Below the pieces are notes generated by a model. The model worked only from the letters and a program-made list of their open reading frames with translations, was not told the DNA's origin and made no database searches. Made by a program: the position numbers and the translations under genes. Shown in pieces: positions 19-59,181 of a DNA stretch of 64,000 nucleotides. Numbering within the stretch: position 1 is the first letter of the stretch; each line of letters starts with the position of its first letter. The stretch is taken from positions 62,001-126,000 of IMG/VR virus record IMGVR_UViG_3300028666_000022. One strand, given 5' to 3'.

Positions 19-2794
19 ATGTTTGATACAATTGCTGTTTTAGTTAGATATTTTAAAGAAAATAAACCAAAGGGCAAAAGAACATGGAAAATTGTAGCAT
101 TTTGGGATACATATAATACTAGAGAATCTAAAATTGAAGAACCTGAGTTATCAGAATCAATTAGAAACGAAGCTTTAAATGAATTGTTTAAACTTTGTCA
201 AGTAAAGACATGGGCAGAATGGAAATCTAAATAAAGATATTATATGATTAATGATTATATTAGTTTAAATTATTGTTATAAAATTGATGGTGAAATTTAT
301 AGAAAATTAGATTTTGAACTAGAATTTTCGTTAAATGTTTATTTAACAAATTCGTTAATTAATCAATTGCGCATTGAATTTGATAATGATTTAACTTCTG
401 CTTTAATTAATGTAATGGAATAATTATGAAAACATTAATCAATTTTTTTAAAAATATTTTTTGTGACATTGTTATTTTCATTCCTGCTCCAAAACAAATT
501 TATTTTAAAATAAATACATTAAAAGATGTTCAACGGTATTTAAATAGTATTATATTCATCAACTCTGGTGGTTGTGGTATTGCTGCATTAGCAATGTTTA
601 AGTGGCTTAAGAAAAACAATTTGATTGAAGAAAATACAACTAATTTTGTATTTCTATATAAATCTGACGATGGAACAGACTATTTAAACAATTCCTCTGT
701 TTTAAAACAAAAATCAGGAATACCAGTAGCTCCAGCACATGTTATTTTATTTCATAAAGGTAATTATATTGATTCTGAAGGCATTGTTGAAGTTAACGAA
801 TATCATTGGTTGCAAAATGTTAATGAAGAAAACTTTGTTGTAAGAGCTAATAATAATTTATTCACATGGTGCGGTTTCTTTGATAGAAACAATATTAAAG
901 ATATTGAGAAAATGTTAGAAATTGATATGGACGATATTTTGATATTAAACTAAGAATGTAACAAAATAAAATTATTTTCGTATAATATTTAAACGATAAA
1001 AATAATCAATATGAAAATAGTATTAAATAAATGTATGAATATCAACGAAATGGTTAATACTGTTAGTTCTTTTTCTAATATTGATACTGCTTTAGATATT
1101 ATTAATAAATTTAAACTGAATGAAAAAGTTGTTTTAATTTGGCATAATAATAAACTTATATTAAAATAAATCATGGAAAAATTAACTGAATCTCAAGAAA
1201 ATAATCTTAAATGGTTAGAAGATTTTAGTGGAGCTGAAAAAGAAGTTACTTTTTCAGATGTTTCTAATATTAGTGATGCAATGAATAATATGTTTTTAAA
1301 CGCTTATCTATATTTTTCAAGCGAATTAGATTCTGAAGATAGAATTAATGAACTAATCGAAATATATAAATCAGGTTATAAATTAATTTTAAATGATTAA
1401 ATTATGAAAGCTATATTGAAAATCGGTGATACTATAAAAATATCAAATAAAAACAAAAATCATTCAGATAATGATGTTTGTGCCTATGCAAATATGTGTG
1501 GTGTTGTAACCAATATTTGGGAAGATAATTCCTTTGCTTTATGTTGTGGAAATTCAACATTAATTGTACCAATGCGAAATGCGTTTAAGAAAAAAATAAA
1601 GGGTATTTGGATATATTTAAATGAAGAATTATTATTTCATAAAAGCAAATAAATTATATGCAAGAATATATTACCACACATAAAAAAGAAAATAAAAACA
1701 AATATATTTATTTTACACAAAAAGTAGAATTAGGTATTGAGAATGAAATTGGTTATGAATTAATGTGGAGTGGTAAAGTTAGTAAAGAAGAATGGAATTG
1801 GTCACAAGAAATTGCTAATGAACAACCAAATAGAGTAATAATAAATGAAAATAATGTTATTTGTATAAAAAATTAAACATGACTGATTTACAAAATAAGA
1901 TATTAGAATTAATGAAATCTCAAGATGAATATGAAAAATGGGGATTTTGTTGTATGGGATATAGAGAAATTTCAAATATATTAAAACTAGAAGCTATATC
2001 AGTATCTAATTCAATGCGAACAATGTACAAAAAGGGTATATTAACTAATTATTATTGTAAAGATCAATATGATGATACCCATTATGAATTAAGAAACCCT
2101 AATTTTAAAAAATGATTTATGAAAACAAAAGAAGAAATTTATAAACAAATTGATAAGGCTATGGAAGCCATTAATGAAGGTGGAAAATTTAATGGAATGT
2201 CTTATGAAGATGGCGTAAAATATGCATTAGAATGGGTATGTGGTGATTCGGATGAAGAACCAATGCCAGAAGAAAATTAATGATAAAATAATTTTATTTT
2301 CGTATATTATTAAAAACATTATTATGAAAAATACCGAAAAAGCAATTGAATGGTGGAATAGTTTAGGTAATTTATATAAAAGAAAATTAACCACAGAACA
2401 TTTTGTTGGGAGAAGAGTTAATACATTATGTGATTCTGAAATTGAAGTAATTTATAATGACTTTAATAATTTTGATTTACCTGAAGATTGTACATCATTC
2501 AATGATATAATGTATGATTACAATAAAACAATTAAAATGAAAAAATATAATATTAATAATTATATAATAATTTACCCAAATGAAAGTGGTTGGAGGAAAA
2601 TTATTGAATTAACCCAATCACATTATGAATTAACTCAAGAAAAAGCAAATGATTGGGTTAATATTAGAAAAGAAAATGGTGGTTTTAAAGAACAATTATG
2701 GGTGTTAATTTCAATTTATTATGAAATGTTTTTCAATGGAGAAAAATATTTTAATACTGCAATAATTGATTTATGTGGTGAAGTTATTGAATAA
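19..2794 (+). CDS. Cluster of small hypothetical phage proteins (19..234, 426..953, 1173..1400, 1404..1652, 1658..1876, 1861..2115, 2240..2794)
   Basis: Tightly packed, co-oriented short ORFs with AT-rich leaders; no recognisable motifs. Confidence 0.6.
958..982 (+). promoter_or_regulatory. ECF-sigma-type promoter GTAAC-N16-CGTA (one of 9 copies)
   Basis: GTAAC at 958-962, exactly 16 nt, then CGTA at 979-982. Same spacing at 7019, 7413, 8350 (ATAAC) and 34721 on +, and at 23218, 23963, 27676 and 58048 on -. Confidence 0.75.
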
Positions 2795-2823
2795 TAATAT
2801 ACAAAAATAAATAATATGAGCTT

Positions 2824-3058
2824 AGAGTATGAAAATAATTAAATTTTCTTTATTGATCTTATGTCAATCGGCTGTACTCCTACAACCTCTACCTTATCTT
2901 ACCTAAGTATTTTAAGGTTACATTTATTAGCTATTATTTTTGATTCAATACTTTCGTATTGTCTTGCTAATTTGTTATTAACTTTTATGATTTTACATTA
3001 CCAAAGTATTAATTTAGGTAATAACCACAATATATCAAAGAACGTAAAGATAAATACT
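2824..3058 (-). ncRNA. Stand-alone TnpB omegaRNA-like cassette A (promoter, boxA-like element, structured leader, scaffold; guide read from 2823 downward)
   Basis: Minus strand encodes a TnpB C-terminal-like remnant (VEVVGVQPIDIRSIKKI*). Hairpins ACCTTA/TAAGGT, GGTTGT/ACAGCC and ATTGA/TCAAT plus pseudoknot GGAGTA/TACTCT parallel the tnpB 3' end at 4082-4187. Segment 2978-3058 is identical (81 bp) to 35945-36025. Confidence 0.7.
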
Positions 3059-3185
3059 GGAAATTATGAAAAAAGTAAATAAAAAGAAGCAGAATTTATT
3101 GCCAATATTAGAGCTGCAATACAAAATGAATTAGGCGAGGATGAGTTTAACATATTAATAAAACATAATTTAAAATATTAATACT

Positions 3186-3892
3186 ATGACACAACAAGAA
3201 CTAGATGTTTTAAAAACTTACTTATCTTATGATGAAATCAAAGAGATATGTATTGAAGAATGCAGAAGATTAGTAAGAGAAGGTGTGAATAGTATCAAAC
3301 CAGATAAAAGAATTGACAATTATGAAAGAATTATTTCAAATGCTGTTCACTACTATCTTGAAACTGAAATAGATCAAATACTTGATGTTAATACAAAAGA
3401 ATTAATCAAATCAAATGTATTAAATATTTTAACAAAACCAGAATTTACAAAATATTCTATTTTTAGAACTAAAAATTCTTGGGATAATGAGGATTCTATT
3501 GGAACTAAATATCTTAAAGAAGCAGTTACAGAAAATAAAAATTATATAAAAGAAAAAGTTAAATCCGTAATTGAAGAAATTGATTTTAATAATCTTAAAG
3601 AAGATATTAAAGAATATATTCTTGAAGTTATTGATGAAAAATTTAGTAAATCACTAAAATAAACAACATTATGATTGGTATTGAATTTACATTTAATGAT
3701 GGAACAAAGGACAATTATGATCCCATTAATTTTCCTGATGATTTCGAAGAAACTAATAAAGAATATATTTTACATATGGTGTATGATTATGTAATTGAGA
3801 AATCAATAGTAAAAAGTATTCGACATTATGAATTATGCCCTATTTGTGGTCATGAATTGTATGAAGACGGTTGTCACAATTATCATGAATAA
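3186..3892 (+). CDS. Two hypothetical proteins (3186..3662; 3671..3892 with CxxC)
   Basis: ORF track. Confidence 0.6.
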
Positions 3893-4081
3893 AAAATTTT
3901 TCTAATTTATGTGGTTTATTTAAATAGTTTTAATATATTTACAAAATTTATTTTAACCTAAATAATAGAAAGGAAATTTGTGATGGAAGAAAATATTTGG
4001 AGTGAACTAAGATACGAAGAAACTGCTGAAAATATTGTTAATATTTTTGCTTGACTAACAGGTGAACTCGATGAAATTGGA
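3885..4081 (+). repeat. Diverged ~200-bp direct duplication flanking the IS607-like element (partner 6165-6359)
   Basis: The same intergenic region (atgaataaaa...tttaatatatttacaaaa...aatagaaaggaaa) and gene 5' end occur on both sides. Confidence 0.8.
3983..4081 (+). pseudogene. Truncated 5' copy of ORF 6261..6479, ending at the TnpB element right end
   Basis: MEENIWSELRYEETAENIVNIFA*LTGELDEIG vs MDENIWSELRYEETGENIINIFGWLTGELDETG; TGA at 4052-4054. Confidence 0.9.
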
Positions 4082-4190
4082 ACAGTACAAAATAATATAA
4101 TAATATTACTTCTTTATGATCGAAACCATTGGCGATACTGCAATCACCTCTATCCCATTATCAAACTCGATGTTTGGAATTGCTTTTCTT
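4082..4190 (-). ncRNA. omegaRNA scaffold overlapping the tnpB 3' end; predicted guide TCCAATTTCATCGAGTTCAC
   Basis: Hairpins ATTCCA/TGGGAT, GGTGAT/ATCGCC and ATGGT-TTCG-ATCAT; loop GCAGTA can pair with terminal TACTGT. Confidence 0.7.
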
Positions 4191-5440
4191 AATATATTTA
4201 AACTCCCGTTTAAATCTGCATTTATCAATTTCTTTGATTTTGATCTATATAAACCCCTATAAATTCTTCTACCACTAAATTTATGTTTATTAATATCATT
4301 GTCTTCAATACCAATATTATTATTTTCACATTTTTTATCTTTCTTTTTATACACTGGTATCTCATCTTCATCTATAAAACTAGCCTTACTCGTATAACTT
4401 TCTTCCTGTATTAAGACATTTATACCAAGTAATTTAGCCTTATATTCTAACATCCATATAAACCTACTGTGTGGTATGCCTACAAATTTTTGATTACTCT
4501 CCTTGCCCATATTTATCTCTTGCTTCCACTCCTTATTATTACCAATTATTAAGGTATTAATATTGTTGTCAACTAAATGATTAATAATATATCGACTTGC
4601 TTTATGCAAATAATCATCAACTTTGTTATTCCTTTTATTTGTTAAATTCTTAATTCTATTGCTTGTCCCATATTGTTGTTTTTCTCCTTTCTTATTTATA
4701 TAATGATTTAAATCTGATTTGTAATGAGCTAAATTTTTATTATAATATTGATTAATACTTTTTAATGGTTTACCATTAATAATTATTGATTTAATTACAT
4801 TACTACCTATTGTTGCTAAATTATTTAAACCCAAATCAATACTAGCATACCTATTATTATTTGGCTTTAACTCAACTTCTTTTACTTCATATAATACTTC
4901 AATTACATAATGATTACCTTTTGGTATTACTCTACATTGCTTAATATTTTTAGAATTTATTTTAGTTTTAACCCTAATATTAGTTCTCGATAATTTAACT
5001 ATATTATTTTTTAATTCTTTTTTCGATATAGCATCTAATGTATAAATCAACATAAATCTACCATTTATCTTATCTTTATAATTGGGTAATTCAGGCTTAC
5101 CTTTATATTTAGATTTATTTTTATTATAATCCTTAATAGAAGCAAAGAAAGATTTCCAATTTTTATCTAATTGCATTAGGGTTTGATTTGATATTTTTCT
5201 AGGTAATTGTATATAATCAATATCATTAGAATCAATCATTAATCTATTAATATCATAATAATTTAAATAATTAGCATGATCAACTAAACCTAATTTTTTC
5301 TCATTACTTGTTTTAATAAATTCTTGTCTGATTATATAATTAGCTTTATTGTAAAGGTTTTTACTAAGAAAACATAGTTTATCAATTTCAATAAAATATT
5401 GATTAGATTTTTTAATTATATGTTTTTCTGTTAAAATCAC
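4106..5440 (-). CDS. tnpB: RNA-guided endonuclease TnpB (IS607-associated; rearranged RuvC-II type)
   Basis: SIDLGLNNL (RuvC-I); IIGNN with downstream QEESYTSK; INADLNGSLNI (RuvC-III). Confidence 0.92.
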   Translation of the reverse strand: MILTEKHIIKKSNQYFIEIDKLCFLSKNLYNKANYIIRQEFIKTSNEKKLGLVDHANYLNYYDINRLMIDSNDIDYIQLPRKISNQTLMQLDKNWKSFFASIKDYNKNKSKYKGKPELPNYKDKINGRFMLIYTLDAISKKELKNNIVKLSRTNIRVKTKINSKNIKQCRVIPKGNHYVIEVLYEVKEVELKPNNNRYASIDLGLNNLATIGSNVIKSIIINGKPLKSINQYYNKNLAHYKSDLNHYINKKGEKQQYGTSNRIKNLTNKRNNKVDDYLHKASRYIINHLVDNNINTLIIGNNKEWKQEINMGKESNQKFVGIPHSRFIWMLEYKAKLLGINVLIQEESYTSKASFIDEDEIPVYKKKDKKCENNNIGIEDNDINKHKFSGRRIYRGLYRSKSKKLINADLNGSLNILRKAIPNIEFDNGIEVIAVSPMVSIIKK

Positions 5441-5479
5441 TTTAAATTATTAATGTTATTAAATTATATTTTACTTATT

Positions 5480-6058: not shown

Positions 6059-6260
6059 GAATAAAATGTTTTATATTTGTATATATAAATACTATTAATG
6101 TAGAAAAAGTTTATATAAATTTCAATAATTTTACATATTAATTATAATTAGTTTAAAATATGTAATGAATAAAATTTATAATTAATGTGTTTTAATTTAA
6201 AAATTTTTAATATATTTACAAAAATTATTTTAATTTAAACAATAGAAAGGAAAGTGAGTC

Positions 6261-6479
6261 ATGGATGAGAATATTTGGTCAGAATTACGTTATGAAGAAA
6301 CTGGTGAAAATATTATTAATATTTTTGGTTGGTTAACAGGCGAACTAGATGAAACAGGAATTGCTATTATTGAAATCAATGTTTTAACTGGTTTTGTAAC
6401 TTATCTTGATGAAAGAGCTAAAGACGATTTATACGCTCAGGAAGCAGTTCAAGAAGTTTTTGATATTTACGGTTTATAA
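6261..6479 (+). CDS. Hypothetical protein (intact copy of the gene truncated at 3983-4081)
   Basis: ORF track; paralog alignment. Confidence 0.8.
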   Translation: MDENIWSELRYEETGENIINIFGWLTGELDETGIAIIEINVLTGFVTYLDERAKDDLYAQEAVQEVFDIYGL

Positions 6480-6676: not shown

Positions 6677-7030
6677 ATGAAATCCCTTACTCAAGAAATT
6701 CTTAATGAATTTGTTCTTGATTTAAAGAAGAATCGATTCAAAGATATTATCAAAGATCTTAAAATAGATTTGTCTTCTAATGAAGACAATACAGAATACA
6801 TTTATCTAGGTTTAATCATTCTTAGGAAAAAAGAAAGACATAAGGGATATGGTTCATTAATCATGAAAGAAATTATATCTTTAGCAAACGAATATAATCT
6901 TCCAATTAAGTTATACTCAACAGCAGCTTATGGTTCAAAGATTGATAAACTAAATGAATTTTATAATAAACATGGTTTTGTTTTAGATAATTTAATGTTG
7001 TGTTATTTTCCAAAAATTGTAACAAAATAA
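6677..7030 (+). CDS. GNAT-family acetyltransferase
   Basis: RHKGYGS motif A; FYNKHGF motif. Confidence 0.75.
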   Translation: MKSLTQEILNEFVLDLKKNRFKDIIKDLKIDLSSNEDNTEYIYLGLIILRKKERHKGYGSLIMKEIISLANEYNLPIKLYSTAAYGSKIDKLNEFYNKHGFVLDNLMLCYFPKIVTK

Positions 7031-7993
7031 ATTAATTTTCGTATAATTTTTAATTTAAAATTAATAAATGAATAATATAAAATATATTGAACCCAATAAA
7101 AGCTTAATGGGGCGAATATTTAGATTTTTTGGTATTGAATTAAACACTAAATTCAATGATGGATATTTTCATACATTTGGTTATTCTGGAAAACAAAAAA
7201 ATAATAAAAGAGATATTATCATAATAGAAAAATTAGATGGAAATGTCATTAGTATACCTAACAATAAAAAATATTATACGTTTCAGAATAATTTTATTTA
7301 TAGTGGACACATTAAAAATATTGAAAAGACTATAGATAATAAACATAACACATTATTTTTAAATGAAAAAATAAGTGTTAATTGGGACGCATAAATTATT
7401 TTTAAAGAATTAGTAACAAATTAGATTAATTTTCGTAATATAAACTATAATCAACAAAACAATAAAATTTATGAAAAAAGAACAACAATGTAAAATATGT
7501 AATAATAAAAAACTAATTGAAGTATTGGTTATGGGAACGGATGTTGATTGGGTGGAATGCCCATATTGTTCGAATAAATCAGAATATATTAAATTTCAAA
7601 ACTCAGTTAATTAATAATCTTATGAAAGAATTAGAAATATCAATTAAGATCCTAAAGGAAGATAAAACAGAATTAGAATGTAAACTTTATTATTTCTTTA
7701 GAAATGGAAGAGTTCCAGATGATAATGAATATTATGAAATGATGGAATTATTAGAAAATTGGTCAATAATAAAATCAAATATTAAGTGTGTCGAAGATAT
7801 TCAAAAAACAATTATTAATAATATTTAGAATATGATAATTTACACTGAAGCAACAATCAACTACATGGCTAACTTGGGTTTAAACAACGAAATTCAAGTT
7901 ATTTTAGCTAATAGTGTGGTAAAAGAAACTGAAAAATTAAAGGTTAAATATGTTGTAATGAATGAAATTCCCGAAACAATTTAGTTTGAAATC

Positions 7994-8353
7994 ATGTCAA
8001 ATACGGTTTATTATATTAACACCAATATTGTTGCTAAATATCGAGAATTTAATAGAGAATCTAATCCATTTCCTATTTGGTTGGGTTTACCACTTAAAGA
8101 TGTTAAATCTTTAGAAAATGATATTAAAATAAACGGCATTGTAAACCCTTTAGAAATAATGGTTTATAAAGGTAAAACATTACTAGTTGAAGGAAATCAT
8201 AGATTATCAATTGCATTAAAACTAAAATTTAAAAAAGTCCCAATTAAATTTACTACTCCAACAAGTGATTATGATTTAAATTATTTTCAAGAAAGAAAAG
8301 AAAAATACGTTAAATTAGATAATGATTTAATAAAAATATTGGAGGTTTTATAA
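7994..8353 (+). CDS. ParB/Srx-like domain protein
   Basis: LENDIKINGIVNPL...LVEGNHRL...VPI. Confidence 0.8.
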   Translation: MSNTVYYINTNIVAKYREFNRESNPFPIWLGLPLKDVKSLENDIKINGIVNPLEIMVYKGKTLLVEGNHRLSIALKLKFKKVPIKFTTPTSDYDLNYFQERKEKYVKLDNDLIKILEVL

Positions 8354-8407
8354 CAAAAATAATTATTTTTCGTACTATATTAAATTTAAACAAATAAAAA
8401 TATTTCC

Positions 8408-23187: not shown

Positions 23188-23230
23188 ATTATTAATATTA
23201 TTAAGTTAAATATATTATACGTAATTAATT

Positions 23231-23926
23231 TTATTTTGTTACAACTAGTTTACATTTTATTAAAAATCTTAAAAAATTTAAATAAGCAAATAATCTTCTA
23301 AATCCTTTTAAATTTGATTTTATTTTGTAAGTGAAATACAATTCATAAATTAATTGAAAATAATTAGGTAATCTTGTTTGAATTAAATCCCATGCCATTG
23401 CATCAGCACCTTCTTCACTATTATCATTATTAAGTTTTATTGAGAAATGATGTCCTATTTCATGGAAAAATGTTCCATAATAATATTTAATATTATAAAA
23501 TCTATCTTCAATTGAACATAATAATATTTTGGGATAGTGAAGTTCTTCTTTTATTATATTACTTTCATAATTTGCTAATTTACAAATTTCTTCATATGTT
23601 TTATGGTATTTCTTTTCAAGATCATTTATTTGTTTCAATGTTTTATTTAATGAATTTAAATATTCGACATCTGTAACATAAATATATTTTCCCAATGCTT
23701 TATTATCTTCATTAGAAATATTAATATTTAATTCATCGTATGTTTTAATAAAAACAGAAATATTTTCTTTTTTACAAATATTTATTGCAGTTTTTTCTAA
23801 TACCTCGATTAATGAAGGATATTTTTTAAAATCAAATAACAATATAAATATATTAAATTGTATTATATATAAAAATATTAGAGAAATTAGTAACAAAACA
23901 AATAATGTAATCATTGTTAGTATCAT
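23231..23926 (-). CDS. Membrane-anchored HExxH metallopeptidase-like protein
   Basis: N-terminal hydrophobic helix; FFHEIGH...SEEGAD. Confidence 0.6.
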   Translation of the reverse strand: MILTMITLFVLLLISLIFLYIIQFNIFILLFDFKKYPSLIEVLEKTAINICKKENISVFIKTYDELNINISNEDNKALGKYIYVTDVEYLNSLNKTLKQINDLEKKYHKTYEEICKLANYESNIIKEELHYPKILLCSIEDRFYNIKYYYGTFFHEIGHHFSIKLNNDNSEEGADAMAWDLIQTRLPNYFQLIYELYFTYKIKSNLKGFRRLFAYLNFLRFLIKCKLVVTK

Positions 23927-23983
23927 AATTTTAATGTTAAATTGTTTATACTATCTGTAATATACGTAAATAGATTTATTTTG

Positions 23984-24505
23984 TTACAATTTTTTAATTA
24001 ACTTTTCTTTTAATTTCCATATTCGTAAACATCCTAATGTAGCAACTTTTAATTTTTCTTCAGTAGTTAATTTCCTACACTCTTTAATTCTACTTGCTTC
24101 TTTATCTATTCTAGCAAAACATCTACCATTTTCATATTTACTACATGTTATTATTCCAGCATCTTCTGGAATAAATTCAATACTTTTCTCTAATAGTTCA
24201 ATAGGTATTGCATAGTATAACTTGCTTATTCTATTTTGTTTATCTTTGTGGTTGTGTCGTTTTTTAAAATCTGCCTTAAGATCAGAAATACTTCTTTTAA
24301 TTTCTACTTCAATAGCGAAACCAGATTTCATAATTATAAAAAGATCGGTTTCATGCATTCCTACTAGTCCCCATGAAATATTTGGTACTATTATATGAGT
24401 TCTTATTCCAAACAGTTTAGAAATAGCTACCTCCATTTCAATTAATGAAATGGTTTTAGATTTAATGATATTTGATTTTCTTTTTATTCCCATTTCACTC
24501 ATCAA
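23984..24505 (-). CDS. PD-(D/E)XK nuclease-like protein
   Basis: ETDLF...EVEIKRSISDLKADFKK. Confidence 0.65.
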   Translation of the reverse strand: MMSEMGIKRKSNIIKSKTISLIEMEVAISKLFGIRTHIIVPNISWGLVGMHETDLFIIMKSGFAIEVEIKRSISDLKADFKKRHNHKDKQNRISKLYYAIPIELLEKSIEFIPEDAGIITCSKYENGRCFARIDKEASRIKECRKLTTEEKLKVATLGCLRIWKLKEKLIKKL

Positions 24506-26845: not shown

Positions 26846-28195
26846 ACTGCTAAATTATCATTAGATTCATCACTAGCTTTAATTACCCAAATAAAAAATA
26901 TACAAATTCCAGTTATCCACCATTGGTAATGATTTGTAAATCCACCAATAAATGTTACAATAACTACAACTAATAGTAGTGTAACTAATTTGTTTTTTAA
27001 AAACCATTTCATAATAATATGTTTTATATTAATACTATTCTTTATTTAACCAATGAACTACTGGCTCATGTCCTTCTTCAACACCAAATTCTTTTAAATA
27101 ATTATTATATGTTTGATCCCATTCATCGATGCTATACCACCATCCTTCAGGTAAAAACATTTTAGCTGCAGCATCTGCTTCTTCATGTGTTTGGAATACA
27201 AAGGTTTCTTCGCACATCAATACTGTAATTAAAAGTGGTTTAAAACCTGCTTGGATTATTTCTTTTAGAAGATCACTTTTTGGTGTGCCATAAGTATATT
27301 CTTCTTGTTCATTAATTGGAAAATTATTTTCCATAATACAACTCATCATTAAGTAGTTGAAAATTTCTCTCTGCTGTTTTTAATTTAAACATAAGATTAT
27401 TTATTTCATCTTCAAGCCTAGAATATTCATTTATTATAATTTTCTTAAATTCAGGATCTGTCGATTTAATCACCTTTGTTTCAAAATCACCATCTTCTTT
27501 CATCCATTTTGGTATTTCAAAATGAATTGCATCACCGATGTTTGATGAATAAGTAGCAGCAGAATTAGCCTGTTTATATGAATTATAACCACTATCTTTA
27601 ATTAGATATCTTATGGAATATTTCTGATATTTTTCTTGATTTGTCATAAAACTAATTTATTTAAAATAATAATAATACGAACAATAATTCATTTTGTTAC
27701 AAAATTGAATTTATATTTTCATGTCCATCGGTCTAAATTTAACTCTTCCAAACCAGCACAACATCTCATAGCATTTACTATCTCAAGCCATTCTGATTGT
27801 AAACCTTTACTAACCAATATTTCTTTTACAATTTTAAGATCATTTAATGATTTCTTAAAATTTATCTGATTTTCAACATTAAGCCAATCCACTCCTTTAG
27901 AAAAACAATAAATAGGTGTTTTTTCTGTCAGAGGTTCTCCACAAATTTCATCTTCATATAGAAGTTTTGCTGCATTTAATACTTTTTCTGAAGTCATAAT
28001 TAATTATTTTAAATATTATATAAACAATTTTTTTCTAACAAATTACAAATGTAAGCAAAAATAACCAAATTTACAAGTATTTATAAAAAAATATCTAAAT
28101 ACTTGCAAATTTCAAAAATTATTCAGATCTTTGCAAAAACATATCATATAAACGTATGATATTTCTCATAAAAATAACCTAATAAAAAAAATCTT

Positions 28196-34707: not shown

Positions 34708-34771
34708 ATTTCATTATTTTGTAACAAATTCAAATCTTTTGCGTAATATATCATAACTTAAAAATATTGTC

Positions 34772-42552: not shown

Positions 42553-42581
42553 TTAAACACTATTAAATCAAATTATTTTTG

Positions 42582-42654: not shown

Positions 42655-43733
42655 TTGTATAAAAATTAATAAAACAAATGTAATAATAAATATTTTATGT
42701 TGCAAGAGTTTTTAAACAATTTCCAAAATATTTTTTTCTTGATTAATTGATAAATCAAAAACACTATATACTTCAACTAAAATATTAATTATACTTTTAT
42801 TTTTTTGTTTCTCAATATCAAAAATATTTCTCCAAAATTTTTCATGAAGAAGAAATAATGTATTATCATTTTCACCTTCTTTTTTATAAAATTGATTATA
42901 ATAATATTCATAAAAATAATCTCTTAATCCAACATTATTACTGAAATCAATTCCCTCTAATTTAAATTCATCACAAACCTTGTTGTAGCACCAATTATAA
43001 TGATTTCTTATATCAGTATCTTCACTTAATGTTTGTTTATCCAAATAAAAATCTACTATATAGTTAAGTAAATTAATTGTGAAATCCTTATAGATTTCCA
43101 CTCTGTCTTTAATGATAATAAATTTCTGATTTGTAGACATCTCACTGCACCAATTAATAAAATTATTTTTTCTTTATCAAAATAAGTTATAATTTATTAT
43201 AAATACTTTAATGAAAAAAGGCACTGAATTAATTTCAATGCCTTTGTAAAGATAGAAAAATAATTTTAAATATCCTCGGAATATTATAAATAATAATAGT
43301 AAATATTTTTATTTATAATACATTTTAATAAAATTATCATATTCATTTCTTGTGATATTAAGTTCTTTAGTTATTTTATTAATTCTTTTATTGTTTAAAA
43401 TAATTGCAATTAATATTATTAAAACAATTGAAACTATTATCATTAAATATGTTATTATAACAATATGTATAATTGGTTTTGAAATATTTAAAATAGTACC
43501 AATAAAACCAATAAAAAATAATAACATTAAAATATCATTAATTGCATTACTTAATATTAATCTTCTTTTTTCATTTTCTTTAGAAAAATATTTATAAATA
43601 AATATTATAAACTTGTTTGGTAAATGTTTGTAGTAAATACTATTAAAATAATCTCTAGTTATGTTTTCCATGTTGTTAATTTATTATAAATACTAGCAAA
43701 CTAGCCATTTACAATAAATTAACAACATTTTAA

Positions 43734-46172: not shown

Positions 46173-46206
46173 TTTAATATAATTTATTATAAATACTTTA
46201 ATAAAT

Positions 46207-54700: not shown

Positions 54701-55043
54701 TTTTATCATAATAAATTATATTAGGATTATTAATCAATGTAACAATTGCTTTTATTGAATCAATCCTCTTTGAATTGTTTGCTAAATAATCATGATTACC
54801 TCTAGTAATTCTAACCGGAGCAATTAATGCTAATGTATTTAATAATTCTGAAGCCAATATTAATTGTTCTCCTTGTAGATTAACATATTCATGAACCAAA
54901 TCACCAACAATCACAATTCGATCTGGTTTTTGTTCGTTAAGAGATTTAATTAAATTTATGAATACAGATTCATACTCTTCATTACGTGTTGGTGATTTAC
55001 GTAAATGTATGTCTGAAAGATGTGCGATTTTAGTTATAGTCAT
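51708..55043 (-). CDS. Fused Mre11/SbcD nuclease and Rad50/SbcC ATPase
   Basis: DIH, GD, GNHD, GDIH phosphoesterase motifs; Walker A GKNENGKT; CPTC hook; Walker B FLLDE; H-loop VEH. Confidence 0.92.
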   Translation of the reverse strand: MTITKIAHLSDIHLRKSPTRNEEYESVFINLIKSLNEQKPDRIVIVGDLVHEYVNLQGEQLILASELLNTLALIAPVRITRGNHDYLANNSKRIDSIKAIVTLINNPNIIYYDKTGFYDDENITWAVWHHGEKNNNPWKSKTGKQIEIDKQTSNKIYIDLFHDPIGGCKSTTGFEMNSKSYYKISDFKSDYLLAGDIHLQQYLDKNKTKAYSGSLISQDFSEGDDAFHGYLLWDVVDKTVKEIPVYNEYSFKNIKITPYTDFDDLDYEISNPTKYMKIRFIWGTLPQTRNKENENKLTQYFNKKYENITISNKNEFIENEKIEVKDKITLENITNSAVQHKIFREYLEKIGTEKQLIEDIIKLDIDEINSKIIIDDVSNIEWNIIKFGCNNFMSYGKFDINWRDQDGIYQIVGKNENGKTTIYKNILYSLFNKTPETESRIKYGDLRYVNNRNGATSCDSYLVLDANGEYYGIKRRTEINKAKDGTINGAPTTVNYYLLSNPDEEMNENTSLEKLDEDRKVKTQKKIERIIGDYDNFMRIVMTTSDSLNKILSTNQMSNFLDELLRDSGLDIFDKKLETLKVYQKKVNEKNRITVDVVKTTQQIDELTQNITTLENDIKVFDTVTIPEVQNKVTIGKKYVEDLTKKLFKIDTEISNLNIVNTNGNISTHNKNIDEFKARETVLNDNIKLLKESYDETKLLDLIGKKDEHKTNEYNQKILIKNAEQIIRDEEHRIEIINGEIFNLKKDGGKYRTEIIELKESKTCPTCKQPLLPEHQSHVDDLIKEKEKLMFEIADQIKIKETRDKKDHQDKINIQNKEIKKIEDNIKTAGLKMEVILKQIGELTNDKNDVEKRKEFQTELNQTPILIQNEELKISILQQKIDNYNNSLLQIEENKKIETGIAAAKLKLTTLETEEQGYKEDMFTKKSLISEKQNKIKTSNELITTFKEQEYRDSVINLYKTCVHRDGIPTQMLSNYIIPKINSTLETILSDSKFKVWLDPDDLRPKLMHYKRPDAIIDCISACGKERTFSSIVLKFALNQINVKAKPMMFLLDEVMGKLDEDSVEEFRDLIHIIKNYVKKILVVEHRVNINPDYTINVQLDENDLSTLTLE

Positions 55044-55253: not shown

Positions 55254-55670
55254 ATGGTAGTATTTAGTTCAAAAAATCGTTATTCTTCAATCTCCGATTT
55301 ATTCTCAACTGTTTTTGATGAAATTATTGAATCATCAAACAAAATTAACAAACGACCTTCTTATGATATTATTGAAAATGATAATGAATATATCATCGAA
55401 GTATCATTAGCAGGAATGAAGAAAGAAAATATTAATATTGAGGTTGATAAAGATAATTTAATTATTAAAGCAAAGCGTGAAGAAAATAAAGAATTAAATT
55501 ATAATCGAAAAGAAACTTATTTTGGAGATTTTGAAAAAACATTTAAATTACCCGATTCAATAGATAATAAAAATATTATATCTTCTTTTATTGATGGTAT
55601 ACTAAAAATTACTATTCCAAAGATTATTAATCCTAATACTAAAAAGAAAATAGAAATAAATCAGTATTAA
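55254..55670 (+). CDS. Hsp20 small heat-shock protein
   Basis: LAGMKKENI, FEKTFKLP, DGILKITIPK. Confidence 0.92.
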   Translation: MVVFSSKNRYSSISDLFSTVFDEIIESSNKINKRPSYDIIENDNEYIIEVSLAGMKKENINIEVDKDNLIIKAKREENKELNYNRKETYFGDFEKTFKLPDSIDNKNIISSFIDGILKITIPKIINPNTKKKIEINQY

Positions 55671-55690
55671 GTTATTGTGCTTAATTAACG

Positions 55691-55719
55691 GGAGATAATA
55701 TATTAATTATGTTATCTCC
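55691..55719. terminator. Bidirectional terminator
   Basis: ggagataa / ttatctcc between convergent genes. Confidence 0.7.
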
Positions 55720-55721
55720 TT

Positions 55722-56270
55722 TTATCTAAATACCTCTTCACTAATATTCTTTTTTAGTTTGGTTTTAATATAATTAATTTTATTACTCACAGTACTACTA
55801 GTAATTTGCAATTTATCCCCAATTTCACTATAATTATATCCTTGAACATATTTTAAATCCAATAAAGTAAAATCATATGGGGATAATTGTGTTGAAATAT
55901 AATTAATTGCGTTAATATTATCAAAAGCATTTGAAGTTAATGTTGAACAATTATATAATAAATTTGTAAAATCCGAAGAATAAATTATTGTTTTATTTCT
56001 CCACTTATCAACCATATAATTTTTTGTTATAGTAAGAACCCATGATTTAAATTTCGATTTATTGTTATCAAAATCTTTTATATTTAGAAAAACCTTAATT
56101 AATATCTCAGATACATCATCCTCAATATCATTATATGTAGAATATTTATATACAATATAATTTTTTACTATTTTTTTATATTTATTATAAATAATTTTTT
56201 GTGCTGCCTGATTTCCAATCAAAATTTTTTGAATCAGAATCATATCCTCTTCTTTCTCTGCTACTATCAT
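55722..56270 (-). CDS. ECF-type sigma-70 family RNA polymerase sigma factor
   Basis: Region 2: EDDVSEILIKVF..FKSWVLTITKN..VD; region 4: GYNYSEIG..TVSNKI. Confidence 0.88.
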   Translation of the reverse strand: MIVAEKEEDMILIQKILIGNQAAQKIIYNKYKKIVKNYIVYKYSTYNDIEDDVSEILIKVFLNIKDFDNNKSKFKSWVLTITKNYMVDKWRNKTIIYSSDFTNLLYNCSTLTSNAFDNINAINYISTQLSPYDFTLLDLKYVQGYNYSEIGDKLQITSSTVSNKINYIKTKLKKNISEEVFR

Positions 56271-57267
56271 AAGGTTTTTGTAATTTCTTCATAAAATAAT
56301 CATCAGTAATTAAAGACCTTGCTGTATATAATGCTTTAATTACTTCTTCTTCACCAAAATTTCTCCTTAATTCATCAACATCATCTTTTGTTGGTAATTT
56401 AACTATCTTAACACTATCTTCACAACCAACATATATCGTTTCTAACATATAAAATAAATCAATTGCATTCGCATATGCATCTGGATCAAGTAAAACAATT
56501 ACTTGTGGTTTTAATTCTTTTAATCTTAAAAATAAAGTTGTTGATAATGTCTTGCCTAATAATGGTATTGCATTTGGAACTGAAAACATATCAGTAACAC
56601 CTTCAACTAAACATACTGGAGAATCCCAATTAATATATCCTTCATTAAATATTATTAAATCTTTATTTGATTTTGGATTATCATATTTATTTTTCAATTT
56701 CCTATCATAAGCCCTCGCTACAAAATAATTAATATCACCATTTCTATCATAAGAGGGAAATATTATCCTCTTAGCATATTTTCCTGTTGTACAAAAACCG
56801 ATCCTATATTTTAATATCTTTTCTCTGTTTATTTTTCTGTCATTTATTAAATAATTATATGCCTCAAAATGTTCTGAATTATTTACATCCATTTGTGAAA
56901 ATAATATCATTTCTTGTGGAAGACTGACTTGTACATATTCTTTTTCTTCATCATAATCGTTAGAAGAATAGTTCCCATAAACACTTAAATATGATTTATA
57001 TAAATCATAATCTATTTTCGTTCCATATAATCGAATTAATTTACCTAAAGAACCAGAAAAATTAGGTTCTGAGCAACGCCAACATCTAAAAACTAACCTA
57101 TTCCTATGTGTTGATATTTCTAAATTAAATTTATTATCGGCATATAATAATCCATCTCGTTCTTGACAACGAGGACAACATGTTTGTAGCTGAGAAGAAA
57201 CACCTAATCCTCTTGTATCTGGAAAGATATTTCCAATAATCTGATGAAATTCAATACCATCTATCAT
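56185..57267 (-). CDS. DnaG-like DNA primase (Zn-binding + TOPRIM); start probably the ATG at 57267
   Basis: CPRC...CWRC; RIIFP..YFVAR; LVEGVTD; LLDPDA; TATATTTG at 57273-57280 just upstream. Confidence 0.85.
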   Translation of the reverse strand: MIDGIEFHQIIGNIFPDTRGLGVSSQLQTCCPRCQERDGLLYADNKFNLEISTHRNRLVFRCWRCSEPNFSGSLGKLIRLYGTKIDYDLYKSYLSVYGNYSSNDYDEEKEYVQVSLPQEMILFSQMDVNNSEHFEAYNYLINDRKINREKILKYRIGFCTTGKYAKRIIFPSYDRNGDINYFVARAYDRKLKNKYDNPKSNKDLIIFNEGYINWDSPVCLVEGVTDMFSVPNAIPLLGKTLSTTLFLRLKELKPQVIVLLDPDAYANAIDLFYMLETIYVGCEDSVKIVKLPTKDDVDELRRNFGEEEVIKALYTARSLITDDYFMKKLQKPYDSSRERRGYDSDSKNFDWKSGSTKNYL

Positions 57268-57284
57268 AGTAGCAAATATAAACA

Positions 57285-57322
57285 AAAAATTGCTATAAAA
57301 CAAGAGAGTTATAGCAATTTTT
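57285..57322 (-). terminator. Intrinsic terminator closing the DGR transcript
   Basis: aaaaattgctataa / ttatagcaattttt (14-bp stem). Confidence 0.7.
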
Positions 57323-57335
57323 AAAAATAAGATAA

Positions 57336-57356
57336 TTAATTACCGATTTTCTTCAT
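57336..57356 (-). pseudogene. Putative stub of a DGR reverse transcriptase (MKKIGN*)
   Basis: Sits where the RT normally starts after TR and spacer; resembles MKRIGNL-type N-termini recalled for Bacteroidota DGR RTs. Confidence 0.5.
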
Positions 57357-57466
57357 TCTTTTTGTTTTTTAAAAAATCATCTTCGTTTTCACTACCAATG
57401 CTCTTCCTTTTATCATAGTCATTTTTTGCCATGCTGGCAAGGTCTACACTATTATTTACAATAAAA

Positions 57467-57538
57467 CATAACTGCGAACTAGTATTCGTATTCAGCGTAT
57501 TATAGTAATAATTCGTATTGTAAAAACTGAAACAAGAA
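57467..57538 (-). repeat. DGR template repeat (TR)
   Basis: 72 bp; differs from the VR at 13 sites, all A in TR; rich in AAT codons in the VR frame. Confidence 0.93.
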
Positions 57539-57579
57539 AATACTAATGTGAGGCAATAGTGTACAATCTATAATCTATT

Positions 57580-58017
57580 TTACATTAAATATTCTTCATA
57601 TAATTTTGTAAATGTCTTTCCACAATATTCTGCCTTTTCCTGACTTTCAAGGCAAAACCGCGAACCAGTATTCGCACCCAGCGCATCATAGTAATAACCC
57701 GCATTGAAAAAACCGAAACAAGAATCAGCATTAAAATAAGGATACCATTTCTTTTGATTATTATTAGTGTAATCAGGTTTCCAATCTTGATTTATTACAT
57801 AGATTATATGTTCCAATTTTAATTGAGCAACAATATGTTTTTTATTAATGTTAAGATAATCATTTGGAACTGGTAATACTCTACAAGCATCATCATATGA
57901 CTTAATGTCTCTCCAGTTATAAAAATTAACTAGCTTAAATACAATATTAGTTCTAGTTGATTTTTCATTATCAACTACATAACCCTCTGGAGCACAAATT
58001 CTAATTTCTTTTTCCAT
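57580..58017 (-). CDS. DGR target protein (small, C-terminal CLec-like variable region)
   Basis: Contains the VR ending in GSRFC; ECF-type promoter copy at 58048-58072 upstream. Confidence 0.85.
   Translation of the reverse strand: MEKEIRICAPEGYVVDNEKSTRTNIVFKLVNFYNWRDIKSYDDACRVLPVPNDYLNINKKHIVAQLKLEHIIYVINQDWKPDYTNNNQKKWYPYFNADSCFGFFNAGYYYDALGANTGSRFCLESQEKAEYCGKTFTKLYEEYLM
57653..57724 (-). repeat. DGR variable repeat (VR)
   Basis: Encodes SCFGFFNAGYYYDALGANTGSRFC; TR in the same frame reads SCFSFYNTNYYYNTLNTNTSSQLC. Confidence 0.93.
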
Positions 58018-59181
58018 CTTATTTTAAATTTAATTATTTACTTAATATACGTAAACATATCTTATTTGTTACAAATTATTTTAATATAATCCCAACGATT
58101 TAAACCAATTATTAATCCAATCAATTCTGTATCCCCATTTACCCGAAATAATATATTTAATTGGCATTCCAATAAGTAAGATTAACATAAAAATCAATGC
58201 AAATGGTAATGTAAATCTAATTATTAATGGTGTTTCAATCTTTTCTTTTTTATAAAATTCTAAATCAGAACCACGTAAACGATCGACAATATCATCGGCA
58301 TTACATTTCTTTAATTCAGGTATTCTATTTTGTAATTCAAATGCAACTGAATTATAATCTATTCTTCTTTGTTTAAAATAAAATGACATAATATTATTTA
58401 TTTAATAATTCTATTGAACAATCATTATACCCTAATTTATATGCATAATCTAATGAAATTTTAAATGTTTCAATAAATTCATTTGAAAAATCTTCACCAA
58501 TACTCAAACGATATTTACCTATATCAAAAACATATTTCCCATCAGCTATAGTAAGTTTAATTGGTGTTTCAACAATTATTACACCTTGTAAAATTTCATT
58601 TTCTTTCATAATATTAAATTTAAATAATTATCATTAAAACTTCTTTTCTCCTTCTAAGAAAGGAAAAAACATAATCAACCTATTCATAAATGCAGGTGGA
58701 ACTATTACAAAATTTCTTCCTAGTTTTAGGTGTTGCTGTTGTAATTCGTTGAAAATCCTAACAACAGTTTGTTTTAATGCACTATCATCAACTACATTAG
58801 AATCCATAACATCTGAACTATTTGAACCATTTTTTAACCTTTGATTTTCAGCAAAAATTTTAGCATAATTTTCTTTTGCTTCACCTAATTCAGTCCTCAA
58901 TAATTCCATTTCTGAAGATAATGCTTCTACCTGTTCTTGTAACCAAGAATTATCATTTAATTGAGTACTTGAAGCCACTTCAGATTTTTCCTGTTCCTTA
59001 ACCTTTTCATTTGGATTCAATGGTATGTCCTCCAATAATTTTGCTACTGTTTCTTTAGCTTTTAAATCACGTTCTTCTTCAGGAGTAGTTTTTTTCACTA
59101 CCTTCTTTACTTCTACTTTTTTAACTACTGGAACAACGGCTTTTTTAGCACCTTTGGCTAAACTCATTAATTTGTTTTCTT

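What the first reader, a model, noticed from the sequence alone, without database searches (positions are those of the whole stretch)
958..58072. Nine exactly spaced GTAAC-N16-CGTA promoters matching a phage-encoded ECF sigma factor
SEEN: copies at 958-982, 7019-7043, 7413-7437, 8350-8374 (ATAAC) and 34721-34745 on +, and at 23218-23242, 23963-23987, 27676-27700 and 58048-58072 on -. All have a 16-nt spacer and point toward the next downstream gene. KNOWN: many ECF sigma promoters carry AAC at -35 and CGT at -10. INFERENCE: this is the regulon of sigma 55722..56270 (or of a host ECF sigma), and it includes the DGR target gene.
Basis: partly seen in the sequence, partly recalled or inferred. 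Interest (0 to 1): 0.6.

Follow-up and report, generated by a model that had tools for sequence, protein, structure and literature searches.

The report
ECF-type promoter class of a jumbo phage

Summary
The window has 8 exact GTAAC-N16-CGTA sites plus one ATAAC variant, against 0.08 expected. All nine are intergenic, and each lies 24-36 nt upstream of a same-strand ATG.

The window is part of a complete 339,898-bp phage with 25% GC and terminal repeats, from rhizosphere metagenomes. Genome-wide there are 24 N16 and 13 N17 sites, with consensus tTGTAACAAA-N13/14-CGTAtAaT. The same core occurs 30-66 times in each of seven further related phages (six of them 299-357 kb and at least 91% complete, one a 96-kb fragment). 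One relative uses N17 almost exclusively.

The phage encodes two ECF-like sigma factors:
- **sigma-2** is the in-window gene (55722-56270).
- **sigma-1** lies at genome 32945-33481, outside the window.

Sigma-1 is the better candidate reader, for three reasons:
- It heads the dense, co-oriented promoter array in 7 of 7 complete genomes.
- It carries a host-type (Bacteroidota TAnnTTTG) promoter.
- It keeps the canonical ECF region-4.2 residues; sigma-2 does not.

Sigma-2 always follows a primase gene. In relatives that operon follows a different, single-element motif (GTATTTATA), which also precedes the portal and terminase genes.

The DGR claim holds in part. A TR/VR pair (13 of 13 mismatches at template adenines) sits just downstream of site 58048-58072, but no reverse transcriptase is detectable in this phage or in nine relatives.

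No RNA data exist, so transcription start sites remain untested. Phage-encoded ECF-type sigmas with bipartite promoters are a known kind (phage 7-11).

The parts
958..982 (+). E-class (ECF-type) promoter, N16; ORF 1011-1169 (52 aa) starts 28 nt after CGTA
7019..7043 (+). E-class promoter, N16; ORF 7068-7394 (108 aa, no family hit) starts 24 nt after CGTA
7413..7437 (+). E-class promoter, N16; ORF 7471-7614 (47 aa zinc-ribbon protein, weak match to Lar-like restriction alleviation PHROG) starts 33 nt after CGTA
8350..8374 (+). E-class promoter variant (ATAAC instead of GTAAC), N16; ORF 8408-8683 (91 aa) downstream; PWM score 22.5 against 31-40 for exact sites
34721..34745 (+). E-class promoter, N16; ORF 34772-35770 (332 aa, hydrophobic N-terminus, no family hit) starts 26 nt after CGTA
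23218..23242 (-). E-class promoter, N16; ORF 22666-23187 (173 aa, phrog_10141, unknown function) downstream
23963..23987 (-). E-class promoter, N16; ORF 23231-23926 (231 aa, no family hit) downstream
27676..27700 (-). E-class promoter, N16; ORF 27324-27647 (107 aa, no family hit) downstream
58048..58072 (-). E-class promoter, N16; drives the DGR variable-protein gene. No terminator-like site on this strand before primase and sigma-2, apart from one weak 7-bp stem inside the VR, so read-through is possible.
57580..58017 (-). 145-aa gene carrying the DGR variable region near its 3' end (phrog_11581, unknown function)
57653..57724 (-). DGR variable region (VR)
   Evidence: 13 mismatches to the TR, all at TR adenines
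57467..57538 (-). DGR template region (TR), intergenic, with AAT/ACG/AGT codons at the varied positions
56185..57267 (-). DnaG-type primase (zinc finger plus TOPRIM); its 3' end overlaps the sigma-2 start. This adjacency is conserved in all relatives.
   Evidence: phrog_47, 3.3e-29
55722..56270 (-).
43685..43693 (-). Example of the second promoter-like class (L-class, GTATTTATA, single element, 22-28 nt before the ATG). Other window copies: 6084-6092(-), 28077-28085(+), 29822-29830(+), 43198-43206(-), 46188-46196(-), 47365-47373(-).

Best explanation
The nine sites are promoters of one transcription class (E-class) of a roughly 340-kb jumbo phage that probably infects a Bacteroidota host. The element is bipartite and ECF-type. 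It has a -35 box tTGTAAC, followed in this phage by an A-tract. A 16 nt spacer (elsewhere in the genome 17 nt) follows, counted from GTAAC to CGTA. The -10 box is CGTAtAaT.

Host core RNA polymerase carrying a phage-encoded ECF-like sigma would bind the element and start transcription a few nt after the -10 box. That gives 5' leaders of roughly 17-30 nt without a Shine-Dalgarno sequence. The class mostly drives small accessory genes (median 118 aa) in a roughly 100-kb arm of the genome. One of them is the DGR variable-protein gene.

The most likely reader is sigma-1 (genome 32945-33481, about 29 kb left of the window), not the in-window sigma-2. The proposed order of events is:
1. Host sigma-A transcribes sigma-1 from a TAnnTTTG promoter.
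2. Sigma-1 turns on the E-class genes.
3. A separate single-element class (GTATTTATA) drives the portal, terminase and ribonucleotide reductase genes. In relatives it also drives the primase-sigma-2 operon. Sigma-2 possibly reads this class.

Shown here: the motif, its statistics, geometry and distribution, its conservation across the clade, the presence of two sigmas, and the synteny. Inferred: that these are promoters, which sigma reads them, and the temporal order.
For: **Motif and geometry**
- Enrichment and coordinates.
- 33 of 37 sites lie 15-60 nt before an ORF start, against 15.6% of random positions. Every window site is co-oriented with the next downstream gene.
- The sites in the PWM scan are intergenic apart from genome 60241 and one weak -35-less hit.

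**Clade conservation**
- The core TGTAAC / CGTATAA(T) occurs about 30 to 66 times in each of G001, G006, G008, G009 and G010 and 22 times in fragment G005, mostly N16. It occurs 61 times with N17 in G002.

**Match to known ECF promoters**
- B. subtilis sigma-W promoters pair a -35 element (tgaAAC) with a CGTA -10, and CGTA is selective for sigma-W (PMC5758882).
- Phage 7-11 gp47 reads GTAAtg-N16-aCTA (PMC8948821).

**Two phage ECF-like sigmas**
- Both have SigW as their best solved relative.

**For sigma-1 in particular**
- It lies immediately upstream of, and co-oriented with, the densest array in G000, G001, G002, G006, G008, G009 and G010.
- A TAnnTTTG box sits 35-40 nt before its ATG in G000 and G001, and immediately upstream of its ORF in G002.
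- It scores higher as an ECF sigma: TIGR02937 104 against 61 bits, Sigma70_r4_2 39.5 against 26.4 bits.
- At the RpoE R171, R176 and R178 positions it has K, R and K, like SigW (K, R, R). Sigma-2 has S, Y and K. R171 specifies the C of AAC.

**Against sigma-2**
- In 14 of 17 related loci there is no E site within 10 kb. A GTATTTAT element lies 1.3-2 kb upstream instead.
- Its linker varies by about 45 residues between genomes that share the same N16 spacing.
Against: - No transcript data exist. Only DNA runs hold the phage, so no transcription start site or sigma dependence has been shown.
- Every complete genome has both sigmas, so presence or absence cannot separate them.
- In this phage an E site does lie upstream of the DGR gene-primase-sigma-2 string, with no clear terminator in between. 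Autoregulation of sigma-2 is therefore possible here.
- Both sigmas have Asp at the RpoE N84 position, like SigW, so either could read a CGTA-type -10.
- Sigma-2's region 4.2 is strongly conserved among orthologs, so it binds something specific.
- The link between a 16-residue insert in sigma-1 of G002 and the N17 spacing rests on a single lineage.
- crAss-like phages with about 30% identical sigma-1 relatives show no such motif.
Confidence: 0.55

Rival explanations
1. One reading: the sites are the regulon of the in-window sigma-2 (55722-56270). Sigma-2 also feeds back on itself through the site at 58048-58072.
For: - Sigma-2 is an ECF-type sigma. Its best solved relative is SigW, which reads a CGTA -10.
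- It has Asp at the RpoE N84 (-10) position, like SigW.
- The site at 58048-58072 lies upstream on the same strand, with no clear terminator before sigma-2.
- Fragments G004 and G005 hold a sigma-2 ortholog and 7-22 sites but no sigma-1. They are only 29-34% complete.
Against: - The arrangement with an E site upstream is not conserved. 14 of 17 related loci have no E site within 10 kb of sigma-2. 8 of the 17 loci instead have a GTATTTAT element before the primase gene.
- The region 4.2 residues at the -35-specifying positions are S/N/N/Y rather than K/R-type.
- Linker length varies by about 45 residues between genomes with identical N16 spacing.
- The G003 fragment has sigma-2 and 27 GTATTTAT sites but only one GTAAC-N17-CGTA match.
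Confidence: 0.2
2. Both phage sigmas read the same core element. Selectivity would be set by spacer length (N16 or N17) or by the tract next to the -35 box (A-tract or nTTTT), as B. subtilis sigma-W, -X, -M and -V overlap.
For: - G000 has 24 N16 and 13 N17 sites.
- Relatives have two -35-proximal types, GTAACAAA and GTAACnTTTT.
- A -35-proximal T-tract modulates ECF selectivity in B. subtilis (PMC5758882).
- Both sigmas share Asp at the N84 position.
Against: - N16 and N17 sites in G000 overlap in location and share flanking sequence.
- Most genomes use essentially one spacing although they carry both sigmas.
- Sigma-2's region 4.2 lacks the canonical -35 contacts.
Confidence: 0.1
3. A host ECF sigma factor reads the sites, and the phage exploits a host stress regulon.
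For: - Bacteroidota encode many ECF sigmas.
- Sigma-1 resembles the Bacteroides expansion family (TIGR02985, 96 bits, below its cut-off), so a host paralog could share its specificity.
Against: - The motif co-occurs with two phage-encoded ECF sigmas in every complete genome of the clade.
- The core is invariant across phages with 25-35% GC that presumably have different hosts.
- Host ECF sigmas are normally held inactive by anti-sigma factors.
Confidence: 0.08
4. The sites are housekeeping-sigma promoters (GTAACA-N17-TATAAT read as -35/-10 hexamers), or they are not promoters at all but binding sites for another protein.
For: - The N16 form can be read as GTAACA, a 17-nt spacer and TATAAT. The sigma-70 scan scores site 58072 at 9 of 12.
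Against: - The invariant bases are the G, C and CG of GTAAC...CGTA. These are ECF hallmarks, not the TTGACA or TATAAT positions.
- N17 forms would need an 18-nt spacer.
- The inferred Bacteroidota host uses TAnnTTTG promoters, which form a separate class in this genome.
- Strict orientation and distance to start codons fit a promoter better than a generic operator.
Confidence: 0.05

Closest known systems
Salmonella phage 7-11 sigma gp47 and its promoters (GTAAtg-N16-aCTA)
   Same: A phage-encoded sigma of the sigma-70 family combines with host core RNA polymerase and reads a bipartite element. The element begins with GTAA, has a 16-nt spacer and ends in a short -10 box, and it is repeated upstream of phage genes (PMC8948821).
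   Different: - 7-11 is a phiEco32-like phage of Salmonella enterica with eight such promoters, all late.
- Here there are 37 to about 66 copies per genome in 300-357 kb phages, mostly before small accessory genes.
- The -10 box here is CGTA(TAAT), not aCTA.
- Two sigmas are present, and nothing has been tested experimentally.
B. subtilis sigma-W / sigma-X regulons (-35 tgaAAC with a CGTA -10; sigma-X: TGTAAC -35)
   Same: The promoter grammar is nearly identical. CGTA is the -10 that gives sigma-W selectivity (PMC5758882). SigW is the best solved relative of both phage sigmas. G001 even has 7 TGAAAC-N16-CGTA sites. That sigma-X uses TGTAAC is recalled from memory, not checked here.
   Different: - Those are cellular envelope-stress regulons with anti-sigma control and autoregulation.
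- The phage sigmas are only about 25-30% identical to SigW, and no anti-sigma partner was identified.
- Sigma-1 is not preceded by its own motif.
phiEco32 gp36 single-element promoters (tAATGTAtA)
   Same: They offer a model for the second class seen here (GTATTTATA). That class is a single conserved element without a -35 box, close to the gene start, before middle and late genes (PMC8948821).
   Different: - gp36 lacks region 4, whereas sigma-2 keeps a conserved, divergent region 4.
- The link between sigma-2 and this class is only inferred.
SPO1 (gp28, gp33/34) and T4 (gp55) temporal sigma cascades
   Same: Successive promoter classes with distinct consensus sequences are read by host core RNA polymerase with phage sigmas. 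This comparison rests on general knowledge and on the abstract of PMC13401047.
   Different: - Those sigmas are not ECF-type.
- The host and promoter sequences differ.
- The cascade order here is untested.

Membership tests
ECF (group IV) sigma-70-family sigma factor (applies to sigma-2 in the window and sigma-1 outside it) | [quoted passage not shown] | tested here: met
   Sigma-2 is 182 aa. It matches Sigma70_r2 (44 bits), Sigma70_r4 (24.6 bits) and Sigma70_ECF (22.6 bits). Sigma-1 is 178 aa, with r2 at 51.7 bits and r4_2 at 39.5 bits.
ECF (group IV) sigma-70-family sigma factor | Score above the curated cut-off of the ECF superfamily model TIGR02937 (42.9 bits) | tested here: met
   Sigma-1 scores 104.1 bits and sigma-2 61.4 bits. 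No equivalog or subfamily cut-off is reached by either.
ECF (group IV) sigma-70-family sigma factor | Canonical region-4.2 DNA-contact residues (RpoE R171, S172, F175, R176, R178) | tested here: inconclusive
   Sigma-1 has K, V, M, R, K (SigW has K, T, H, R, R). Sigma-2 has S, N, N, Y, K (residue roles from PMC7776599). Sigma-1 fits the pattern and sigma-2 departs from it.
ECF (group IV) sigma-70-family sigma factor | Binds core RNA polymerase and directs initiation at its cognate promoter | not testable with these tools
   No RNA runs hold this phage. Biochemistry or a reporter assay is needed.
ECF-type promoter | -35 box containing AAC and -10 box containing CGT, separated by about 14-17 nt | tested here: met
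   The element is GTAAC-N16/17-CGTA with an extended consensus. The spacer range is taken from PMC5758882.
ECF-type promoter | Intergenic, co-oriented with the downstream gene and a short distance before it | tested here: met
   33 of 37 sites have an ORF start 15-60 nt downstream, against 15.6% of random positions. The window sites lie 24-36 nt upstream. The sites in the PWM scan are intergenic apart from genome 60241 and one weak -35-less hit.
ECF-type promoter | Transcription start about 6-9 nt downstream of the -10 box, dependent on the sigma | not testable with these tools
   Only DNA contigs are available.
ECF-type promoter | Autoregulation: the motif lies upstream of its own sigma gene (typical, not universal) | tested here: not met
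   Sigma-1 has no co-oriented E site upstream and has a TAnnTTTG box instead. Sigma-2 has an E site about 1.8 kb upstream only in this phage, not in 14 of 17 related loci. Non-autoregulated ECF groups do exist (PMC7826278).
Diversity-generating retroelement (DGR) | TR/VR repeat pair whose mismatches all fall at template adenines, with the VR at the 3' end of a gene | tested here: met
   Over 72 nt there are 13 mismatches (11 A>G, 2 A>T), all at TR adenines. The TR has 22 A among its 72 bases.
Diversity-generating retroelement (DGR) | A cognate reverse transcriptase encoded nearby | tested here: not met
   PF00078 gives no match at E<=1 in the whole 340-kb genome. None passes the cut-off in nine relatives. 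The gene next to the TR is a primase.
Diversity-generating retroelement (DGR) | Ongoing diversification of the VR | tested here: inconclusive
   The VR is identical in contigs from three other rhizosphere runs. Contigs drop rare variants, so this does not rule out diversification.

The most novel reading that the evidence does not exclude
A widespread clade of 300-357 kb soil and rhizosphere jumbo phages runs a three-tier programme with two diverged ECF-like sigmas of its own.
1. A host-type TAnnTTTG promoter makes sigma-1.
2. Sigma-1 fires 30 to about 66 bipartite TGTAAC-N16/17-CGTATAAT promoters before small takeover genes.
3. Sigma-2, fused in an operon with the primase, reads a -35-less element (GTATTTATA) before replication and virion genes. 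It has a re-tooled region 4 and a linker of free length.

In this phage the first sigma also drives a DGR template and variable cassette that has no reverse transcriptase of its own. That cassette would have to borrow one in trans.
Probability: 0.3. Interest if true: 0.6.

Novelty: new member of a known kind. Interest (0 to 1): 0.45.

Why it matters
Phage ECF sigmas were explicitly left out of the large ECF classification (PMC7826278). Only a few phage sigma-promoter pairs have been worked out experimentally.

This clade has at least 78 terminase relatives in IMG/VR. It offers an unusually clean, copy-rich promoter set and two candidate sigmas, which would:
- give a readable map of transcription units and temporal classes in uncultured jumbo phages;
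- supply compact, probably orthogonal sigma-promoter pairs for Bacteroidota genetics;
- provide a natural experiment on spacer length (N16 against N17) and -35-proximal tracts in ECF promoter recognition.

The finding is not a new principle. It extends the scheme known from phage 7-11, phiEco32 and SPO1 to a new phage group and host phylum.

Tried and rejected
1. **RNA evidence for start sites.** The run search found 13 rhizosphere DNA runs and no RNA run.
2. **Laying contigs of four runs on 55600-58500** (2,901 letters, within the operators' limit). The aim was to look for VR diversification. The VR and TR were identical in runs X2-X4, which is uninformative because contigs drop rare variants.
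3. **Separating the two sigmas by presence or absence.** All seven complete genomes carry both. The fragments G003-G005 are too incomplete to count.
4. **Separating them by linker length against spacer length.**
   - Sigma-2's linker varies widely without relation to spacing.
   - Sigma-1 of the N17 genome has a 16-residue insert, but that is a single lineage.
5. **Looking for the motif in crAss-like phages** that carry about 30% identical sigma-1 relatives. AAC-N16/17-CGTA is not above control there.
6. **A close-relative search with sigma-1 alone** found nothing. An alignment query found four loci.
7. **A search for a further bipartite motif** that sigma-2 might read, after masking the E sites. 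Nothing rose above control except TGAAAC variants in G001.
8. **A -35 element for the GTATTTATA class.** None was found in three genomes.
9. **A reverse transcriptase for the DGR.**
   - There is no PF00078 hit in this genome.
   - None passes the cut-off in nine relatives.
   - A YxDD-motif scan gave no plausible candidate.
   - A weak second TR-like match at genome 326.6 kb looks spurious.
10. **An alternative genetic code** was considered and dropped. Coding density is 92% under table 11, with all three stop codons in use.

Full report
**1. The observation**

The pattern GTAAC-N16-CGTA occurs 8 times in the window, at exactly the coordinates given. Dinucleotide-preserving shuffles predict 0.08, and none of 100 shuffles reaches 8. 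Allowing one mismatch adds the ATAAC copy at 8350-8374 and one unrelated hit.

The consensus is tTGTAACAAA, an A/T-rich spacer, a T-run, then CGTAtAaT. Every window site is intergenic. Each is followed on the same strand, 24-36 nt after the CGTA, by an ATG that opens an ORF of 47-332 aa. No Shine-Dalgarno sequence precedes these start codons.

**2. The context**

The window is bases 62001-126000 of a 339,898-bp IMG/VR virus record. The record has direct terminal repeats, is rated complete and has 25% GC. Table 11 gives 92% coding density. The DNA is held by rhizosphere metagenome runs only, and no RNA run holds it.

The host is probably a Bacteroidota, on four indirect grounds:
- TAnnTTTG boxes are enriched upstream of genes.
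- Start codons lack Shine-Dalgarno sequences.
- Sigma-1's second-best NCBIfam model is the Bacteroides expansion family.
- The phage Hsp20's nearest cellular relatives are Cytophagales MAGs at 36-38% identity.

This host assignment is an inference.

**3. Genome-wide picture**

The strict pattern occurs 24 times with N16 and 13 times with N17 (12 distinct sites, one duplicated in the terminal repeat). A reversed-sequence control gives 1 and 3. All N17 sites lie at genome 0-62 kb, outside the window.

Of the 37 sites, 33 have an ORF start 15-60 nt downstream, compared with 15.6% of random positions. Only GT is enriched before AAC. The sites concentrate in a roughly 100-kb arm (17-120 kb). They precede small genes, with a median of 118 aa. 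Most of those genes match no family. The exceptions are a weak Lar-like zinc ribbon, phrog_10141 and phrog_11581.

Two other upstream motif classes exist:
- **H-class (TAnnTTTG, host type).** It precedes sigma-1, the Mre11-Rad50 fusion gene and helicases, among others.
- **L-class (GTATTTATa..aAa).** This is a single element 22-28 nt before the ATG with no -35 box. It precedes large genes (median 277 aa). These include the portal, large terminase and ribonucleotide reductase genes.

**4. Conservation**

A terminase search finds 78 related loci in IMG/VR. Counts of the GTAAC...CGTA element in relatives:

| Genome | Size | Completeness | Sites |
|---|---|---|---|
| G001 | 299 kb | 91% | 30 (N16) |
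| G002 | 328 kb | 100% | 61 (N17), 1 (N16) |
| G006 | 327 kb | 100% | 63 (N16-17) |
| G008 | 322 kb | 100% | 66 (N15-18) |
| G009 | 357 kb | 100% | 55 (N15-18; reversed control 21) |
| G010 | 325 kb | 100% | 57 (N15-18) |
| G005 | 96 kb | 29% | 22 (N16) |
| G004 | 113 kb | 34% | 7 (N16) |

TGTAAC and CGTATAA(T) are invariant across the clade. The bases just after GTAAC differ between genomes (AAA here, ATTTT or CTTTT elsewhere). The GTATTTAT class is conserved in all of them as well. The E-class is therefore a clade-wide regulatory signal, not a local repeat.

**5. Which sigma reads the sites**

The phage has two ECF-like sigma genes:
- sigma-2 in the window (55722-56270, minus strand);
- sigma-1 at genome 32945-33481 (plus strand).

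They are 27% identical to each other. Both pass TIGR02937, and both hit B. subtilis SigW as the best solved structure. SigW's promoters pair a tgaAAC -35 with a CGTA -10 (PMC5758882).

Evidence that favours sigma-1:
- (a) In G000, G001, G002, G006, G008, G009 and G010 the sigma-1 ortholog lies directly upstream of the densest E-site array, in the same orientation. The first site follows within about 0.05-2 kb.
- (b) A TAnnTTTG box precedes sigma-1's ATG by 35-40 nt in G000 and G001 and lies immediately upstream of its ORF in G002, and there is no E site. This fits early expression by the host holoenzyme.
- (c) Sigma-1 scores much higher on the ECF and region-4 models.
- (d) At the positions shown to specify the -35 bases (RpoE R171/-31, S172/-34, F175/-32; PMC7776599), sigma-1 has K, V, M. 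It also retains R176 and K178. SigW has K, T, H, R, R. Sigma-2 has S, N, N, Y, K.

Evidence about sigma-2:
- It always directly follows, and overlaps, a DnaG-type primase gene.
- In 14 of 17 related loci no E site lies within 10 kb. A GTATTTAT element lies 1.3-2 kb upstream.
- Its linker varies by about 45 residues between genomes that share the N16 spacing. That is hard to reconcile with reading a strictly spaced bipartite element.

- In this phage, site 58048-58072 lies upstream of the DGR gene-TR-primase-sigma-2 string, with no clear terminator in between.
- Both sigmas carry Asp at the RpoE N84 (-10) position, as SigW does.

No complete genome lacks either sigma, so the question cannot be settled by computation alone. 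My estimates are:

| Statement | Probability |
|---|---|
| The sites are promoters read by a phage ECF-type sigma | about 0.8 |
| Both read them, with overlapping specificity | about 0.1 |
| A host ECF sigma reads them | under 0.1 |

**6. The DGR statement**

On the minus strand, 57467-57538 (intergenic) and 57653-57724 (3' end of the 145-aa gene 57580-58017) are 82% identical. All 13 differences fall at adenines of the first copy (11 A>G, 2 A>T). The template carries AAT, ACG and AGT codons at the varied positions.

However, PF00078 finds no reverse transcriptase anywhere in the genome. It finds none above cut-off in nine relatives. The gene next to the template is a primase. The variable region is identical in contigs from three other samples. 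The cassette is therefore either a relic or depends on an enzyme supplied in trans.

**7. Comparison with what is known**

The closest characterised case is Salmonella phage 7-11. [quoted passage not shown] Its relative phiEco32 uses a single-element promoter, tAATGTAtA, read by gp36 (PMC8948821). The E-class here mirrors the first case and the L-class mirrors the second.

The promoter grammar itself is that of the sigma-W type of ECF promoter. Phage ECF sigmas were not captured by the ECF classification (PMC7826278).

I therefore file this as a new member of a known kind. What is new is the phage group, the copy number, the coexistence of two ECF-like sigmas with three promoter classes, and the lineage-specific switch from N16 to N17.

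**8. Limits**

- Gene calls are my own crude longest-ORF calls.
- The promoter classes are defined by sequence alone.
- The temporal order is inferred from gene content and from which promoter type precedes which regulator.
- No alternative genetic code was used.

Noticed in passing
window 57467-57538 (TR), 57653-57724 (VR), 56185-57267 (primase): This is a DGR-style template and variable pair: 13 of 13 mismatches fall at template adenines. No reverse transcriptase is detectable in the 340-kb phage or in nine relatives, and the neighbouring gene is a primase. The VR is unchanged in contigs from three other samples. The cassette is either a relic or is served in trans.
   Followed up: partly
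window 6084-6092(-), 28077-28085(+), 29822-29830(+), 43198-43206(-), 43685-43693(-), 46188-46196(-), 47365-47373(-); genome-wide about 56 upstream copies: There is a second, more abundant promoter-like class: the single element GTATTTATa..aAa, 22-28 nt before the ATG, with no -35 box. It is conserved in all relatives. It precedes the portal, terminase and ribonucleotide reductase genes and, in relatives, the primase-sigma-2 operon. Its reader is unknown; sigma-2 is a candidate.
   Followed up: partly
genome 0-62 kb (outside the window); relative G002: The same promoter also occurs with a 17-nt spacer: 13 copies in this genome, all outside the window. In one complete relative the 17-nt form is almost the only one (61 against 1). 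That relative's sigma-1 has a 16-residue insert after region 2.
   Followed up: partly
window 55722-56270 and orthologs (L013-L029): [quoted passage not shown] The region-4.2 helix (STVSNKINYIKTKL) is nearly invariant.
   Followed up: partly
window 4106-5440(-), 5480-6058(-), 11990-13126(+), 16134-17354(-): There are at least two TnpB / IS605 OrfB-type genes (Cas12f-like TNB domain), and a third ORF (4106-5440) that looks like one but was not scanned. That third ORF sits next to a 192-aa ORF that resembles an IS607-type serine recombinase (judged from its sequence, not scanned). That pair is flanked by direct repeats of about 170 nt (3915-4082 and 6192-6360, 79-89% identical). GTATTTATA-type elements precede the recombinase-like ORF and one of the TnpB genes.
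   Followed up: no
window 2978-3083 / 35945-36050 and 4103-4166 / 35808-35871: Two short segments are repeated at 94% identity about 32 kb apart, in a different order and spacing. One overlaps the 3' end of the TnpB-like ORF 4106-5440. They may be ends or guide-RNA remnants of a mobile element.
   Followed up: no
window 59530-60459 (in gene 59182-60468) and 46669-47082 (in gene 46207-47124): There are in-frame tandem repeats: five units of about 189 nt in a DUF4379/DUF723 zinc-finger protein, and 45-nt periodic repeats in a 305-aa protein.
   Followed up: no
window 29871-31154, 31243-32322: Two adjacent proteins carry ice-binding-like (PF11999) domains, one of them with an fn3 domain. They are probably surface or tail-fibre-type proteins.
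   Followed up: no
window 51708-55043(-), 55254-55670(+), 42581-42654(-): There is a single 1111-aa protein that fuses an Mre11-like phosphoesterase with a Rad50/SbcC-like ATPase. An Hsp20 gene is convergent with sigma-2. A tRNA-Gly(TCC) gene is also present.
   Followed up: no
genome 311216-314704 and 288452-291019 (outside the window; L103, L114): The portal gene carries an internal HNH-endonuclease-like segment. A helicase gene carries a LAGLIDADG-like segment. These are possible inteins or inserted homing endonucleases.
   Followed up: no
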